Assembly: GCA_033442325.1 (NCBI GenBank)
Contig: JAWQFM010000002.1
Coordinates: forward strand, 2,631,144 to 2,695,143
Direction of reading: 5' to 3'
Length of the DNA: 64,000 nucleotides
Source: Salpingoeca rosetta
Lineage: Eukaryota; Protista; Choanoflagellata
The position numbers were made by a program, and so were the translations under genes. Shown piece by piece: positions 52,758 to 60,412 of the stretch. Numbering within the stretch: position 1 is the first letter of the stretch; every line of letters starts with the position of its first letter. Under the pieces are notes generated by a model. That model was not told where the DNA came from. It saw nothing but the letters and a program-made list of their open reading frames with translations, and searched no databases.

Positions 52758-54842
52758 ATGGAAGGACACGTCACCGTGAAGGACGTCGGTGTGCTCGGCA
52801 CTCGCGTGCGATGCTACATCAGCCCTGGCGCAGGCCCCGAGGTAATGCGAGCATAGGAACAACCCCCCCCCATTCTTTTTGCATACACGCACAGGGGAAC
52901 ACACAAACGCATGTGATGTACAAGCGTGCTTTCGATGGATGCAACAACCACACATCATTCCCCCCCCCCCCACACAAACAAACAAACAAACAAGCACATC
53001 CGTGCAATGCCTGCCATCTCAGCACCTCACACATGCCTCCCATCCCTATGCCAACACACCACGTATGTGATAGGTGGTGCTGTTGCATGACGCGTTCAGC
53101 AAGTCGCTGCAGTTCCGTGCGCAGCTCAACGGAAACCTTGGTCGCCAGCTGCGCCTCATCGCCATCGACCTACCTGGGCACGGTGCCTCTCAACCACCGG
53201 CCGACGTGCACGTAAGTGGAACTCACACATGCACCTGCTTCACCAGCATGGACCTCCACAGCGTCCCAGTCTTCCTCTGTCTGCCACATTTTTTTCATCA
53301 AACTCTGCCCACTGCGCCGCGCCGCTCACACAACATGATGTCCGCGGTCGAACACACATGCGTGCATGCGTGCATGCAGCGGTACTACACAGTCACGGGC
53401 ATGGCAAAGATCGTCGGTGGCTGTCTGGAAGAGCTTGGTGTTCGCTCCGCTTATGTTGTCGGCAGCGGGCTTGGCGCCCGTGTTGGCCTCAAGTTGAACG
53501 GCGCAATCAAAGGTCTGTGGTTGTCCGTGTGTGCGTGTGTGTGTGCTTGTGCGTGTGTGCGTGCGTGCGTGCGTTGGATATTTGTTTGTGCATGCGAGTG
53601 GACTGGATCGAGAGGCCTGCCCATGTCACCAGCGACGAAATAGCGCGCCTGCAATGCAGTCGCAGCACACACACGCACACACACGCCCTCATCAACCCTG
53701 TGCTGTTTTGTGTTGTAGTGGAAAGCATCATGATGGTTGGCACAGCCCCGCTGCGGAAGAACGCCTGGCAGTCATCGGGAGAGGTACGGTTCATGCGTTG
53801 TCAGCAGCACAAGGCCGTTCAAATCCTACCCTGCTCGTGCCGTGTTCTGCTGCTAGTGACACCACAAACACGTTCGCACACACACACACACATGCACACA
53901 CACGCACACTCTTCTGCGTTGCTCCTATTCCTTTTGCTCCATTCCCGTGGTCTAGCTGCTTGCACGTGCGCCGGCTGTGGCCAAGATGGCCGACACCGTC
54001 AACCTCACGGCCGAGGTAAGGGGGATGGTGTCGCGTGTGCCGCGTGGTGTCGCGTGCGGAAAACGCACGATGTTGTGGCTTGCATGCTCACGCTCAGCTG
54101 TCACGGATGCCTCATCCTGCTTGCACGCTCATCCGACACATTGCATCAGGATGTGCATGAGCTGCTTCGGCACTTTGTGTCCCCGGAAGAACTGAAACAG
54201 GACGCGTTTGCTTGGGTGTCACACGCCATCAAGCACACCGACGCTCGCCACAGAAACGCAAGTGGAACGCATGCTCTGTTCACTATGCATGCGTATGTGT
54301 TCGCGTGTGTGCGTGCGTGTGGTACGTGCGTGTTCATGTGTGCATGTGTGTGTGTGCAATGTTGTTCTAACGGCTGCGTGGTGTTGCTGTTTGGACAATG
54401 ACAGGTTGTTCGCCACGAATTGCAGCTCGACACCTTCGATGAGCTGAAGGTGACTCGGAGATGAAAGTCTAAACATTCGAACACACACACACACACACAT
54501 TCGCTTTGTGATACTCGCAGTGCAATTTTGTTTCCACTTTCACTGACTCACCCATGTCTCTGTCCCTCGCTTTGCATCCTCACCACCTCCACTTCATCAT
54601 CATCACTAGAGCCTCTCTGAGCTTTCTTCCCGCGCAAAGCTCGGCCTCGTTGTTGGCGCACACGACCACCTCGTCTCCTACGATTACATCTCATCTGTAC
54701 GATTTCGCACACGCCCACATGTGTGCATGTAACACACACCGTGGTGCCCTGCTTCTCTTGTGCCTCATCAGTCCACCCACTCGCACACACACACTCTCTC
54801 TGTCTCTCTAATCCTCTCTCACTTGCCCTGTCTCTTGTTCGT

Positions 54843-54930
<88 letters not shown>

Positions 54931-55277
54931 CTCGCAAGTGCAGCTGCGTTTGCCAAACTTGTGGCGGCAGTGTGTGCAGGTGGTGCCGGGTGCGTTCCAT
55001 TTCGTCGGCGCGTCGCGCCCGCACGCATTTGATGCTCTCATCCGGGACCTCATCAAGGACACGCGCGGATCAATCACCCCAATCCAACGCAAGGTCGCCC
55101 CCGCGCTGGTGCATGTGCTCATGGTCGTGTGTGTGTGTGTGTGTGTGTGTGTCTGCCTGTCTGTGCCTGCGTGTGTGTGTGTGGATGTGACTTTGTGTGT
55201 GTCACGCAGATTACACGTGACCGTGTCTGTGCGAACACAAGCCTCCTTTGTTCCTGCGCGTTCCTTACATTGTCGCG

Positions 55278-55311
<34 letters not shown>

Positions 55312-55428
55312 CTGGATGTGTTCAGGTTGATCCGGCCACAGCAGAGACGCCAGCAGGGAAATCAGGCGCCCTCGTGCCACCAGCTGCCAGGTAAACACGT
55401 TGACTTGCCTGCTGACTTGAAAACAGCG

Positions 55429-55462
<34 letters not shown>

Positions 55463-56524
55463 ATGATTGTTGGTTTGCTCTTCCCTCTGCTATGAACGTG
55501 GGTCGCGTGTATGAACCACGCACACGTACACACCCTCCCTCCCTCACATGTATTGGCATATGTGTGTCTGCGAATGCGTGTGCCCTGGGCTGCGCGTGAC
55601 AGGTTTGAGCCGCCTGTTGTGGAGGGCGAATCGCAAGCAAAGCCAGCAAGTGCCGCCAACACACCGGTGCGTCAACATGTGACGCCGTTGCTGAGGTCAC
55701 TCATGTCACGTCAGCCACACTACCATGTGTGCTCTATCAACCATACCCAGTCTTCACGATCAACAAAACAAACACACACACATACACAACACGCACACAC
55801 ATACAACACACACACACATAACACGCACATAACACAACACACACATAACACAACACACACATAACACAACACACACATACACACACACGACATGTATGAC
55901 GAGCAGATGGCGAAGAACCCTTATGCGCGCGGCAAGGTGCCTGGCGGGACAATGCCCCATCCGTCAATGCGCTTTGAAATTGGCGCTGACGAGCAGCCGT
56001 ACGCAAAGGAGCCTGTCGTGCACAACCCAGAGATGGCCGCAAACCCGCACGCTCGCGGGCGCATCAAGGTGCTGGTGGTGTGATGTGACGTTGTGGTGTG
56101 CATGTCATGTTGTTTGTGTGCGGATGTGTGTGTGTGTATGCGTGTCATGTTTTGTGTGTGTGTGTGTGTGTGTGCGTGCGTGTGCGTGTGTCATTGATCT
56201 CAGTATTCGTTGTTTTGCTTGCGTTCACAATCCACGCCTTCTCATCCACATGCTCATCACGTCCCATCGTCCCTGGTATCGTTGTCAGGGTGGCGTGATG
56301 CCACACCCTGGCGCGCGCTTCGAGGTGACGGCGACAACACTCGCAGGCGAGCGCAACGGACAGAACGAAGTTGCTCGCAAGAACCCATACGCACGCGGCC
56401 GTGTTCCCGTGAGTTGTTGTGCTGATTGTGTGGTGTTGCTGCAGCAGTCGTGGCGGTAGCAATTTATTGTCATGCGCTGCTTTATGCGGAGGAACAGACT
56501 TGCTGGTGCTCATCGTTCCTCTGT

Positions 56525-56618
<94 letters not shown>

Positions 56619-57069
56619 TGCATCACAGGCTGGCAAGATGCCACACCCCAGCTCGCGATTCGAGGGCCAACCAGAGGATGACACCAACGGTGCTGCAAAC
56701 AACACGTCTGCAAACGCAACGCCGTCCAAGGTGCAGAACCCATACGCACGTGGCCGCATTCCTGGTGGTGAGATGCCCCACCCTGGTGCTCGCTTCGAAG
56801 GACACTGGATCGATCGTCCAAGCAGCAGGTGTGACACCATCACTGCACCTGCTACTTGCTCTGCATCCGTGCGTGTGCGTGTGTGTGTGTGTTGTAGGAA
56901 GAATCTTGGCAGGGCAAGTCTCGCGTTGCATGCCCTCTTTGCTGAATTGTGTCACACTTGCTTTGCTGCTCCTCACCTTTTCGTGTTTTTTTTTGTGTGT
57001 GTGTGTGTGTGTTGCCACAGGGCACGCCAACCCCCTGGTGGGCACACCCACAGCAACATCTTTGGCTGA
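52758..57069 (+). CDS. Alpha/beta-hydrolase-fold protein (nucleophile absent) fused to C-terminal NPYARG-PGG-MPHP repeats
   Basis: VVLLHDAF, LRLIAIDLPGHGAS, VVGSGLGA, VGAHDHLV and GAFHF exons splice in frame into repeat-encoding exons ending RARQPPGGHTHSNIFG-stop. Confidence 0.8.
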
Positions 57070-57782: not shown

Positions 57783-57860
<78 letters not shown>

Positions 57861-57873
57861 CACACACACACAC

Positions 57874-57923
<50 letters not shown>

Positions 57924-57977: not shown

Positions 57978-60412
57978 CTAGCGAAGGAACAGCTCGACAA
58001 ACTCCATGCTCTCATCGCCATCGGGACCATCACCGCCACCCGTCTTCTCCGTCAGTGTCGCAACAACGCCACTCCGGACAGCTGTGCCGAGCGGCTGGCA
58101 CAGCAGCAGCATCTTCCCGCGGGCCTCGTCCGCAAACACGCTCAGTCGCGTCGCCGGCAGCCTGCAACAGAGGGGAGGGGGAGGACAATGGGAAAGGTGG
58201 TGTGACACATGGCAACACAACTGTCAGTGTTGGAGAGAACCTTGTTCAGAGAATGCAGCAACTCATGACAAACGCACCATCGCCACAACATAACAACAAC
58301 AGGCAGCAACAACAACAAGTGTCAACAAGCAACAAGTCACAACAAGTAACAACAAGCAACAAGTGAGCACAAAGATGTCGACGCACCCGAGCTCCTGCAT
58401 TGCGGTTGCGGCGACGTCACCAAGCGTCATCGACTCCTGGACACCGAGAAGGGTTGTCGTCTCGCCATGCCGTGCCTGCACCCGCACCATGTACATCACA
58501 GGCTCGGCTGTACACGTGCACACACGATGACGGATGAGAGATGGGCGGTGGTAGTGGTGATGGCAGCATCGATTGTAAGGAGATGAAGCAATTGCAACCA
58601 TGGAAATGGTTAGGTGATGTGTACGTTGATGTGCCCGCACCAAGACAAGCGCAAACAAACAAACGAACAAACAAACAAATAAACACAAGTGAGTGAGCAC
58701 ACGAACGAAAACCCATCCGAAGACTCACGTGGTGACTGCGGGTGTTGCGGCTGCAGCATCTGCAATGCGAGCGGCAGCGCGATGCTGTCTCGTCGCGGGG
58801 CCGACGACGAAACGGAGTGTGTATCTGCACCATTGCTCATCGACAACAGTGCCTCCTTCCCGCCTGACGCGACAATCTTCTTACCGACGCCCACCTCGTC
58901 ATCTGGCGGCAGCAGCAGCGGGTCAACCTTCTCCATGCCAACAAGGATGAACGTCTGCATGAGACCGCGGCCTTTCAACTCGACCTCGCCGCGCGGGCGG
59001 GACTGCACCGTCGCATTGCCGGCACGCAGCTCGCTCATCATCGACGCGCTGATCTGGATGCACGACGGTACGCCAGCGCTCTCCATCTGCGCCGCAACAG
59101 CAACCTGGAGGCAAGGCGGCACGCATTGGGTGAGTGTATTCATATGTGTGCATTTGGGTGTGTGTGTGTGTGTGTGTGTGAGCGGGAGAAGGGAGTGCAG
59201 TGTGTGAATGGGGCGGGCGCTTTGGTGTGATGAAAGCACGCTCATGCTTGGCATCAGTTGCGCATGAGAGCTTACCGCATCGCCAAAGAGACAGTAGCGA
59301 GGACGCGTCTGTCCGACTGCATGAACAACAGATTTGGTGAGGCGTGAAAGAACCGGTGAGATGAATGTTAAGCAAGTGTACACGAACTTTCTAACTAACA
59401 CAACACAACACAACACAGACACACAGAGACACAACACACACACACACACAAACAAACAAACAAACAAACAAGCAAACAAACAAACAAACAAACAAACAAA
59501 CAACAGGCTTCTTGCGGACTGACCGACTCCCGCCATGACAGAGCCGCTGTGCATGCCAATGCGCATCCTTATTGGGGCGCCATCAACGGGCGACAGCACC
59601 TCCCGGCTCGCACGTAGCATGTCAATCGCAAACCCTTGGTGCAGTCAGTCACGACGGTGGTGAAGGGGGGGGGGGGTGATGATGGAGGCAGGTGAGAAAG
59701 GGGGTGGAGTGTTATGTCAAGTGCAAGTGGCAGTAAATGGCTGATGGCATTGTATTGGCGTTGTGTGGACAGCACGTTTGCATCGGGTGCAATGAACGTA
59801 CGGCAGAGGCGCTCTGCGTGGTCGGGAGTCGTTTCTGGAAGACCAGACGCAACCATGTCTGTGAAATGGCGAAGTCAAGGGCATATGCAGGGAAGGAATA
59901 TCAGTGGTGGAGAACATCAGCGCCACACATGTAGATATTTACATAAACACACACATTTACACACATTTACACACAGACACACAGAGGACTCACACACACA
60001 CACACACAGAGGACTCACTCACACACACACAGACACACAGACACACACACACACACAGAGGACTCACAGGCGTCGCCGATGGTCTCGACTTTGTAGACGC
60101 CGTGCTTGTCGCAGAGCTGGTCGAAGCGGAGGAAGAGGCTGTTGAGCATGTCCATGACCTGCGTTGGGCGCACGGCACTGGAGATCTTGGTGAAGCCGAC
60201 AATGTCGGAGAAAAGGATGCTGACGTTTCCAAACCGCTCAGCGGGGGCCTCCTCGCCGTTTGCAAGGTACTGAATCACAGTCTGCGTGATTACAGCCAGG
60301 CATAGGGCACATTGCGTGTCAGCGAGCATGTGGAGTTGTGTATGCAGGGGAAAGAGATGATGGGAGAGAAAGCATCAGAAGCACGAAACCACTAACGAAA
60401 GCCAACCCTCTC

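What the first reader, a model, noticed from the sequence alone, without database searches (positions are those of the whole stretch)
55908..57069. Novel NPYARGxxPGGxMPHPxxRFE repeat tail ending in a Jupiter/SPIRAL1-like PPGG motif
Four copies of a ~21-aa motif occur (about 55916, 56042, 56381 and 56737; two are split by introns), plus a partial PPAARFE upstream, separated by variable spacers. The protein ends RARQPPGGHTHSNIFG, which resembles the PPGG-xS-xFG microtubule-binding termini of Jupiter/HN1 and plant SPIRAL1. Inference: a multivalent microtubule- or flagellum-binding tail on an inactive hydrolase, possibly a small-molecule sensor tethered to the cytoskeleton.
Basis: partly seen in the sequence, partly recalled or inferred. 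Interest (0 to 1): 0.7.

Follow-up and report, generated by a model that had tools for sequence, protein, structure and literature searches.

The report
Pseudo-lactonase with Jupiter-like repeat tail
A choanoflagellate gene of likely bacterial origin encodes a catalytically dead lactonase-like protein whose disordered tail has four evenly spaced copies of an undescribed 21-residue motif and ends in the peptide that makes animal Jupiter/JPT proteins bind microtubules, so it is probably moored to the cytoskeleton, though this is untested.

Summary
Window 52758-57069 (+) is the 15-exon Salpingoeca rosetta gene PTSG_01544 (509 aa, annotated only as hypothetical / AB hydrolase-1). The head (aa 1-287) is an AidH-type alpha/beta hydrolase with Gly in place of the nucleophile Ser in all 11 aligned relatives. 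The tail (aa 288-509) is predicted disordered. It holds a half repeat, four NPYARGxxPGGxMPHPxxRFE repeats, and the end SSRARQPPGGHTHSNIFG.

Transcript-derived single ORFs in four other choanoflagellates show the same fusion. The repeat matches no Pfam family, no solved chain and no paper found. Its motifs are the best conserved part of the protein, and the repeat period is held near 41 residues while the spacers diverge.

The last 18 residues are 14/18 identical to the C-terminus of S. rosetta's own Jupiter/HN1-like protein. PPGG lies 11-12 residues from the C-terminus, 11 as in the minimal microtubule-binding peptide of human JPT2.

The same end caps S. rosetta cystathionine gamma-lyase and proline iminopeptidase; this scan had already noted both on other DNA of this genome. 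In environmental relatives the lyase also carries two of the repeats.

Microtubule binding is a well-founded inference, not shown. The small-molecule sensor idea is weak.

The parts
52758..57069 (+). Whole gene PTSG_01544: 15 exons, 14 introns, 1530 nt of coding sequence, 509 aa
   Evidence: Each exon translation is a consecutive substring of P0030. Exon count and lengths agree with the supplement of PMC7971027.
52758..55093 (+). Exons 1-9: AidH-like alpha/beta-hydrolase head (aa 1-290). The nucleophile elbow reads G102-S103-G104-L105-G106, with Gly in place of Ser.
   Evidence: Pfam Abhydrolase_6/1. PDB phmmer with the M. roanoka ortholog gives AidH at E about 1e-27. AF2 pLDDT is above 80 for residues 1-287. 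The top 8 Foldseek hits are AidH, TM 0.87-0.91. Gly104 is invariant.
54258..54404 (+). GC-AG intron 6 (donor GCAAGT)
   Evidence: Only this donor gives RHRN|VVRHELQ as in P0030 and its ortholog P0007.
55326..55666 (+). Exons 10-11 with the intron between them: linker and degenerate half repeat 0 (..GALVPPAARFE; coding bases 55377-55390 plus 55603-55609)
   Evidence: Aligns with G-x-MPHPxxRFE half repeats of the orthologs, about 43 aa before repeat 1.
55916..55978 (+). Repeat 1: NPYARGKVPGGTMPHPSMRFE
56042..56324 (+). Repeat 2: NPHARGRIK | GGVMPHPGARFE (56042-56068 and 56289-56324), split by a phase-0 intron
56382..56664 (+). Repeat 3: NPYARGRVP | AGKMPHPSSRFE (56382-56408 and 56629-56664), split by a phase-0 intron at the same motif position
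56289..56408 (+). Exon 13: 120 nt, 40 codons, phase 0 at both ends. It equals exactly one repeat period, from the second half of repeat 2 to the first half of repeat 3.
   Evidence: The same exon structure is seen in the Tara relative L008/L009.
56737..56799 (+). Repeat 4: NPYARGRIPGGEMPHPGARFE
56821..57069 (+). C-terminal Jupiter/JPT-type peptide SSRARQPPGGHTHSNIFG plus stop (56821-56828 and 57021-57069; the last intron lies between)
   Evidence: It is 14/18 identical to the C-terminus of the S. rosetta Jupiter-like protein. The PPGG-to-C-terminus distance was measured. The DNA pattern for this end hits only 4 genes in the genome and 0 in the control.

Best explanation
PTSG_01544 is a two-part cytosolic protein. 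The head is an alpha/beta-hydrolase of the bacterial AidH (N-acyl-homoserine-lactonase) type. It is listed in the literature as a horizontal-transfer candidate acquired in the choanoflagellate ancestor, and it has lost its nucleophile Ser (Gly in every relative), so it is a pseudoenzyme. The tail is about 220 disordered residues. It carries one half copy and four full copies of a basic 21-residue motif (N-P-x-x-R-G-[RK]-x-x-[PGA]-G-x-M-P-H-P-x-x-R-F-E) at a fixed period of about 41 residues, separated by unconserved spacers. It ends in a Jupiter/JPT-type peptide (S-[ST]-R-x-x-x-P-P-G-G-x5-6-[FL]-G-COOH). Most likely mechanism (inferred): the terminal PPGG peptide docks on tubulin as it does in JPT2, Jupiter and SPIRAL1, and the periodic PGG-containing repeats add multivalent contacts along a protofilament. 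A 41-residue period is long enough to span the 8 nm tubulin dimer, in the manner of the PGGG repeats of tau. The result would be the head held on microtubules. The same end, and in other species the same repeats, sit on active enzymes (cystathionine gamma-lyase, proline iminopeptidase). The tail therefore behaves as a portable anchoring module rather than as part of any one enzyme's chemistry. Shown here: gene structure, fusion, loss of the nucleophile, repeat conservation and fixed period, identity of the end with the organism's own Jupiter-like protein. Inferred: microtubule binding and its geometry.
For: - Gene and fusion. Complete single transcript ORFs exist in Microstomoeca roanoka, Salpingoeca infusionum, Hartaetosiga gracilis and Choanoeca perplexa.
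- The first tail exon of the Tara relative has no ATG and the intron positions are the same.
- Head: AidH at phmmer E 1e-27 and Foldseek TM 0.87-0.91. AidH S102G is inactive but still binds C6-HSL (PMC3532132).
- Gly104 is invariant. 32 of 37 invariant columns lie in the tail. Mean column conservation is 0.77 for motifs, 0.33 for spacers and 0.41 for the head.
- Repeat period: n=52, median 41, and 47 of 52 fall within 38-47 aa.
- PPGG starts 11 residues before the C-terminus in 18 of the 19 proteins measured (12 in S. rosetta), the same as JPT2 LNPPGGKSSISFY, which is sufficient for microtubule localisation.
- The tail end versus the S. rosetta Jupiter-like protein (L021) is 14/18 identical, pairwise E 7e-5. 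The top Pfam hit of that protein is JUPITER.
- The same end caps the lyase and the proline iminopeptidase of S. rosetta.
- Lyase with two repeats and an NPPGGK end occurs in environmental sequences.
- The tail is predicted disordered.
- Horizontal-transfer listing.
Against: - No experiment on this protein or on any relative; no localisation or proteomic data were found.
- The 21-residue repeat resembles no known microtubule-binding module beyond its PGG core. It matches no solved chain (the PDB sequence set also holds axonemal inner proteins solved by cryo-EM).
- Pfam JUPITER does not match the tail.
- The two serines reported as critical in the JPT2 peptide (S186, S188) are not both conserved in the hydrolase-type end.
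- The binding site proposed for the JPT2 peptide rests largely on an AlphaFold3 model in one paper.
- A fixed period could equally serve binding to another periodic or multivalent partner.
Confidence: 0.55

Rival explanations
1. The tail is a multivalent docking or condensate-forming region for a partner other than tubulin, for example a shared adaptor, actin of the collar, or a membrane-associated complex. On this reading the PPGG end is a general C-terminal recognition peptide that Jupiter-like proteins also use.
For: The repeat has no detectable relative among known microtubule binders. The tail is disordered and rich in P, A and G. JPT2 also has non-microtubule roles (NAADP binding, phase separation) according to abstracts listed.
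Against: The terminal peptide is, in the only tested cases, sufficient for microtubule localisation. SPIRAL1 and Jupiter are microtubule proteins. The basic motif, acidic spacer and fixed period fit lattice binding.
Confidence: 0.25
2. The head is a ligand sensor. A dead AidH-like pocket binds acyl-homoserine lactones or similar bacterial lactones without hydrolysing them, as AidH S102G does. The tail stations this sensor on the cytoskeleton or flagellum.
For: The natural Ser-to-Gly change is the same one that traps C6-HSL in the AidH crystal. The Tyr160 equivalent is Tyr in M. roanoka (alignment). The gene has a bacterial origin. Choanoflagellates respond to bacterial cues (my own knowledge).
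Against: The cap domain that builds the AidH substrate tunnel is largely deleted in Choanoeca and in P0008, P0032, P0011 and P0012. The His259 column is kept in only 4 of 11. The tunnel residues M188, F189 and F192 are replaced. The head is far less conserved than the tail.
Confidence: 0.1
3. The tail is a separate small gene that starts at the ATG at 55907, and the fusion is an annotation artefact.
For: Exon 12 begins with ATG directly after its acceptor AG.
Against: Four other species give complete single ORFs from transcript assemblies that join head and tail. The orthologous exon in the Tara relative starts AAG CTG AAC with no ATG. Reading phase is continuous across all 14 introns. A half repeat lies upstream, in exons 10-11.
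Confidence: 0.02

Closest known systems
Jupiter / JPT1 (HN1) / JPT2 (HN1L) microtubule-associated proteins
   Same: The C-terminal peptide S-[ST]-R-x-x-x-PPGG-x5-6-[FL]-G-COOH, with PPGG starting 11 residues from the C-terminus in 18 of the 19 relatives measured (12 in S. rosetta), 11 as in the JPT2 minimal microtubule-binding peptide LNPPGGKSSISFY. The end is 14/18 identical to the C-terminus of S. rosetta's own Jupiter-like protein. Both contain several PGG motifs in a disordered chain.
   Different: This is a 509-aa fusion to a folded pseudoenzyme, not a small standalone protein. It lacks the N-terminal SSRVLxPPGGxSNFS motif. Pfam JUPITER does not match. Its internal repeats (NPYARG..MPHP..RFE, 41-aa period) are unrelated to the internal regions of JPT.
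Plant SPIRAL1 / SP1L
   Same: A short disordered microtubule-binding protein whose conserved terminal motif PGGG-x-SSL-x-YLFG resembles PPGG-HTHSN-IFG (PMC9959322).
   Different: SPIRAL1 has the motif at both ends, has no internal 21-residue repeats, is plant-specific, and is not fused to enzymes.
Tau / MAP2 / MAP4 microtubule-binding repeats
   Same: Tandem imperfect repeats in a disordered region, each containing a PGG(G) turn at a fixed period, thought to follow the tubulin lattice (as cited in PMC12773733).
   Different: The period is 31-32 aa against about 41 aa here. There is no sequence similarity outside PGG, and no homology was detected.
AidH, the metal-independent N-acyl-homoserine lactonase of Ochrobactrum (PDB 4G5X, 4G8B)
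   Same: The head has the same fold including the cap domain (TM 0.87-0.91; E 1e-27 by sequence with the M. roanoka ortholog). The acid (Asp230) and His259 align with Glu219 and His248.
   Different: Nucleophile Ser102 is Gly104 here and in all relatives. The tunnel residues are changed. A eukaryotic tail and 14 introns have been added.
S. rosetta cystathionine gamma-lyase and proline iminopeptidase with PPGG ends (earlier notes s1-433468 and s1-436496)
   Same: The same C-terminal peptide on a spliced, disordered extension of a metabolic enzyme. In environmental relatives the lyase also carries two NPYARG..RFE repeats.
   Different: Those heads are apparently active enzymes (the PLP lysine motif SVTKYYNGHSD is kept in P0033 and P0034). 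In S. rosetta their tails lack intact repeats.

Membership tests
Jupiter/JPT (Pfam PF17054 JUPITER) | Significant match to the family profile | tested here: not met
   No PF17054 hit at E<=10 for the tail exons, for P0001-P0005, or for the full-length relatives. Even the S. rosetta Jupiter-like protein reaches only 14.3 bits against a cut-off of 27.
Jupiter/JPT (Pfam PF17054 JUPITER) | C-terminal PPGG peptide ending the protein (PPGG plus 7 residues) | tested here: met
   PPGG to C-terminus is 11 residues in 18 of the 19 proteins measured and 12 in S. rosetta. JPT2 LNPPGGKSSISFY has the same spacing. 14/18 identity to the S. rosetta Jupiter-like C-terminus.
Jupiter/JPT (Pfam PF17054 JUPITER) | Small standalone disordered protein with an N-terminal SSRVLxPPGGxSNFS motif | tested here: not met
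   This is a 509-aa fusion with a folded N-terminal hydrolase. The N-terminal motif is present only in the separate gene L021.
Jupiter/JPT (Pfam PF17054 JUPITER) | Binds microtubules | not testable with these tools
   Needs localisation or co-sedimentation experiments.
Alpha/beta-hydrolase fold, AidH-like | Fold with cap domain | tested here: met
   Pfam Abhydrolase_6/1, PDB phmmer E 1e-27, AF2 pLDDT above 80, Foldseek TM 0.87-0.91.
Alpha/beta-hydrolase fold, AidH-like | Nucleophile Ser in the G-x-S-x-G elbow | tested here: not met
   The elbow reads G102-S103-G104-L105-G106. Gly is at the nucleophile column in 11 of 11 sequences. AidH S102G is inactive.
Alpha/beta-hydrolase fold, AidH-like | Catalytic His and acid | tested here: inconclusive
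   His259 and Asp230 are present in S. rosetta and align with AidH His248 and Glu219, but the His column is kept in only 4 of 11 relatives.
Alpha/beta-hydrolase fold, AidH-like | Hydrolyses or binds acyl-homoserine lactones | not testable with these tools
   Needs a biochemical assay.
SPIRAL1/SP1L | Direct repeat GG(G/H)QSSLxYLFG at both termini | tested here: not met
   Only a C-terminal PPGG..IFG is present and there is no N-terminal copy. This is a resemblance, not membership.
Tau/MAP2/MAP4 repeats | 31-32-residue repeats ending in PGGG (Pfam Tubulin-binding) | tested here: not met
   The period is 41 aa. No Pfam tau-repeat hit was found.
NPYARG-PGG-MPHP-RFE repeat tail (family defined here) | Two or more copies of the 21-residue motif at a 38-47 aa period, followed by a PPGG end | tested here: met
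   28 hits at E<=1e-3 among 1.84 billion representatives. The full-length ones are hydrolase+tail and the rest are tail fragments or partial products, some traced to lyase genes.

The most novel reading that the evidence does not exclude
Choanoflagellates and some unnamed marine protists use a portable anchoring module made of periodic 41-residue repeats plus a Jupiter-type C-terminal peptide. The module would station metabolic enzymes (cystathionine gamma-lyase, proline iminopeptidase) and a domesticated bacterial pseudo-lactonase at regular 8 nm intervals on microtubules, possibly inside the lumen or on flagellar microtubules. The repeats would then be a new class of lattice-reading microtubule-binding motif, and the animal Jupiter/JPT peptide would be the remnant of an older, wider enzyme-tethering system.
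Probability: 0.3. Interest if true: 0.85.

Novelty: new variant of a known kind. Interest (0 to 1): 0.66.

Why it matters
[quoted passage not shown] It would use the peptide recently shown to target human JPT2 to microtubules. It would also give the poorly understood Jupiter/HN1 motif a pre-animal history and a set of natural fusion partners. The strictly spaced 21-residue repeat would be a new candidate lattice-binding motif that is easy to test in vitro. Finally, the gene illustrates how a horizontally acquired bacterial enzyme can be stripped of catalysis, given introns and equipped with a eukaryotic localisation module. S. rosetta has genome editing, so the prediction can be tested directly.

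Tried and rejected
- Pfam on each exon and on the environmental tails found nothing for the repeat. There were only weak Abhydrolase hits on exon 2 and chance low-complexity hits on intron read-through.
- PDB sequence searches with P0003 and with the tail profile A2 gave no hit at E<=10.
- An own-genome protein search with exon 14 found no paralogue of the repeat outside this locus.
- An own-genome search with Pfam JUPITER returned nothing, but the control was silent too, so it is uninformative. The Jupiter-like gene was found instead with a DNA pattern for the C-terminal peptide.
- The first gene model used a GT donor after exon 6 and broke the frame. It was corrected to a GC-AG intron using the ortholog and the public protein.
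- Literature searches for PTSG_01544, for the motif strings, and for JPT together with choanoflagellates gave nothing relevant beyond the horizontal-transfer supplement.
- An Ndr/NDRG relationship of the head was considered. Pfam Ndr hits are partial and mostly below cut-off, whereas AidH matches along the full length, so NDRG is at most an analogy.
- The joined spliced protein was never typed or submitted. Searches were made exon by exon by reference, and after with the stored public protein P0030.
- No contig looked human.

Full report
**What is there.** The window is choanoflagellate DNA with short introns rich in CA/GT. On the plus strand, 52758-57069 is a 15-exon gene. My first model broke frame after exon 6. 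The Microstomoeca ortholog and the public protein show that intron 6 is GC-AG, with donor GCAAGT at 54258. With that correction, every exon translation is a consecutive substring of PTSG_01544 (XP_004997521.1, UniRef F2U0N2, 509 aa). That protein is annotated only as 'hypothetical protein' or 'AB hydrolase-1 domain-containing'. After I used the stored public protein P0030. No contig looked human.

**The observation.**
  - NPYARGKVPGGTMPHPSMRFE at 55916-55978
  - NPHARGRIK|GGVMPHPGARFE at 56042-56068 plus 56289-56324
  - NPYARGRVP|AGKMPHPSSRFE at 56382-56408 plus 56629-56664
  - NPYARGRIPGGEMPHPGARFE at 56737-56799
- Degenerate DNA patterns for each half of the motif hit exactly those four places. 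None is expected in 100 dinucleotide shuffles.
- The partial PPAARFE spans the exon 10/11 junction.
- The protein ends SSRARQPPGGHTHSNIFG.
- Repeats 2 and 3 are cut by phase-0 introns at the same motif position. Exon 13 is 120 nt, exactly one repeat period with phase 0 at both ends. That layout is what exon duplication would produce.

**Is it one gene?** Four lines of evidence say yes.
- The public annotation already joins head and tail.
- Complete single ORFs from transcript assemblies of Microstomoeca roanoka, Salpingoeca infusionum, Hartaetosiga gracilis and Choanoeca perplexa have the same architecture.
- In a Tara Oceans relative, the orthologous first tail exon starts AAG CTG AAC, with no ATG. 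Its intron positions inside the repeats are the same.
- The half repeat upstream lies in exons 10-11.

**The head.**
- Pfam gives Abhydrolase_6/1.
- By sequence the nearest solved structure is AidH, the metal-independent N-acyl-homoserine lactonase of Ochrobactrum, at E about 1e-27 with the M. roanoka ortholog.
- An AlphaFold2 model built on the family alignment is confident for residues 1-287. Its eight best Foldseek hits are all AidH entries, with target TM 0.87-0.91. The next hit is at about 0.66-0.78.
- The AidH triad is Ser102/His248/Glu219. The S102G mutant is inactive but still binds C6-HSL in the crystal (PMC3532132).
- Here the elbow reads G102-S103-G104-L105-G106. Gly occupies the nucleophile column in all 11 aligned relatives.
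- Asp230 and His259 are present in S. rosetta, but the His column is kept in only 4 of 11 relatives. The cap region is largely deleted in several.
- The supplement of PMC7971027 lists PTSG_01544 as a horizontal-transfer candidate. Its best hit is a Rhizobiales alpha/beta hydrolase at 34% identity, its alien index is 55, and it has 14 introns. Acquisition is placed in the choanoflagellate ancestor.
- The head is therefore a domesticated bacterial enzyme that became a pseudoenzyme.

**The tail as a family.**
- The repeat matches no Pfam family, no solved chain and no paper. It has no paralogue elsewhere in this genome.
- A word search found environmental fragments with two repeats and an NPPGGK end.
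- A profile of these plus the window exons was searched against 1.84 billion representatives. It gave 28 hits at E<=1e-3 and nothing from animals, fungi or plants.
- The full-length hits in that list are alpha/beta hydrolases with four to six repeat or half-repeat copies and the end S-T-R-V-x-Q-P-P-G-G-x-T-x-N-I-F-G. The short hits are tail fragments or partial products.
- A second architecture came from the contigs of the fragments and from a further word search. It is a Cys_Met_Meta_PP enzyme (cystathionine gamma-lyase type, PLP-lysine motif intact) followed by two repeats and R-G-K-N-P-P-G-G-K-x-x-x-V-[FL]-G.
- On three environmental contigs, the tail follows the last lyase exon after an intron at a conserved position, with a conserved linker SPNPVEFL.
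- In the 11-sequence alignment, 32 of 37 invariant columns lie in the tail. Mean column conservation is 0.77 for the motifs, 0.72 for the end, 0.33 for the spacers and 0.41 for the head.
- The spacing between successive motifs is held tightly. Of 52 intervals the median is 41 residues, and 47 lie between 38 and 47, although the spacer sequences are not conserved.
- AlphaFold gives pLDDT below 50 throughout the tail.

**The end is Jupiter-like.**
- A genome-wide DNA pattern for 'PPGG, five or six codons, [FL]G, stop' hits exactly four places in the 55 Mb genome. The reversed-pattern control hits none.
- The first place is this gene.
- The second is a standalone 144-aa protein, MSHVQTFSGHSGQNSSRVLAPPGGRSNFSF...SSRVLAPPGGHTHNIFG. 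Its best Pfam family is JUPITER, at E 0.029 and below the cut-off. Its N- and C-terminal motifs are those I recall from HN1/JPT1.
- The third is the last exon of the S. rosetta cystathionine gamma-lyase gene, reading ..LAESPARYEGSRPPSRHPPGGQSTITFG with one decayed half repeat.
- The fourth is the last exon of a proline iminopeptidase gene, reading ..LHKRPLQPPGGYSHNIFG. Its preceding exon matches the C-terminal 50 residues of solved prolyl aminopeptidases.
- The last 18 residues of PTSG_01544 are 14/18 identical to the C-terminus of the Jupiter-like protein, aligned end to end, with pairwise E 7e-5. The Microstomoeca ortholog gives 12/17.
- In 18 of the 19 tail-bearing proteins measured, PPGG begins exactly 11 residues before the C-terminus; in S. 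rosetta it is 12.
- That is the geometry of human JPT2 LNPPGGKSSISFY. PMC12773733 reports this 13-residue peptide as the minimal microtubule-localising element. It is displaced by taxane-site ligands and is part of a PPGGK*S repeat system likened to the PGGG of tau.
- The plant SPIRAL1 consensus, GG(G/H)QSSLxYLFG preceded by P at the C-terminal copy, is similar as well (PMC9959322).
- After I had found the lyase and iminopeptidase cases by pattern search, a look-up showed that this scan had already noted both on other DNA of the same genome.

**How it most likely works.** The terminal peptide is the element with experimental precedent, so I take it to be a tubulin-docking peptide. The repeats are basic, each contains a PGG turn, and they are separated by acidic or neutral spacers of fixed length. 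That is the signature of a chain that follows a periodic surface. Forty-one residues have about 13 nm of contour length, which comfortably spans the 8 nm tubulin dimer. I therefore read the tail as a multivalent microtubule anchor that holds the head on the lattice. Whether the site is cytoplasmic, flagellar, luminal or on the outer surface cannot be said. Everything about binding is inference, and I put it at about 0.55.

**Rival readings.**
- A non-tubulin partner of the tail (0.25).
- A tethered lactone sensor (0.1). The variable cap, the lost His and the weak head conservation argue against it.
- Two separate genes (0.02).

**Comparison and novelty.** The protein works like a Jupiter/SPIRAL1/tau-type microtubule binder but is not a member of those families. 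It has no JUPITER profile match, no N-terminal motif and a different repeat. [quoted passage not shown] The gene itself is publicly annotated and listed as a horizontal-transfer candidate. I found no paper describing its tail, the repeat family, the fixed period, the link to the organism's own Jupiter-like protein, or the sharing of the module with active enzymes. I class it as a new variant of a known kind and score its interest at 0.66.

Noticed in passing
window 54258-54404: Intron 6 of PTSG_01544 is a GC-AG intron (donor GCAAGT). A GT-only gene model breaks the reading frame here.
   Followed up: yes
L021:1102-1536 (G000:C34:484775-485209, +): An intronless 144-aa Jupiter/HN1-like gene of S. 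rosetta, with SSRVLAPPGG motifs at both ends and a polyQ middle. Its top Pfam hit is JUPITER but below cut-off. I found no paper linking JPT proteins to choanoflagellates.
   Followed up: partly
L019:304-1536 (G000:C10, +): A proline iminopeptidase gene whose C-terminal extension (low-complexity exons, polyQ) ends in LQPPGGYSHNIFG then stop. It has no NPYARG repeats.
   Followed up: partly
L020:441-1536 (G000:C29, +): The S. rosetta cystathionine gamma-lyase has three extra 3' exons after a donor placed right at the end of the enzyme domain. The tail ends PPGGQSTITFG and keeps one decayed half repeat (SPARYEG).
   Followed up: partly
L005, L006, L007; P0033-P0035: Environmental and SRA sequences carry cystathionine gamma-lyase with two intact NPYARG..RFE repeats and an NPPGGK end. 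The intron between enzyme and tail is at the same position in all three contigs; in L005 it is only 33 nt long and contains an in-frame TAG.
   Followed up: partly
L014:1224-2672: A hydrolase+tail homologue (P0011) lies on a 61-67% GC, apparently intron-poor Tara Oceans contig, 200 nt from a convergent 1143-aa UCH gene. This suggests the family may extend beyond the intron-rich choanoflagellates. The taxon is unknown.
   Followed up: no
window 58610-59620 (-): An ORF with a class III nucleotidyl-cyclase signature (..RMRIGMHSGSVMAGV..) lies downstream on the opposite strand. Other notes of the scan already cover it.
   Followed up: no
window 54820-54930, 56520-56615, 57790-57920 and many others: Long (CA)n/(GT)n microsatellites fill most introns and flanks of this gene. 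They create long spurious ORFs rich in His-Thr or Cys-Val.
   Followed up: no
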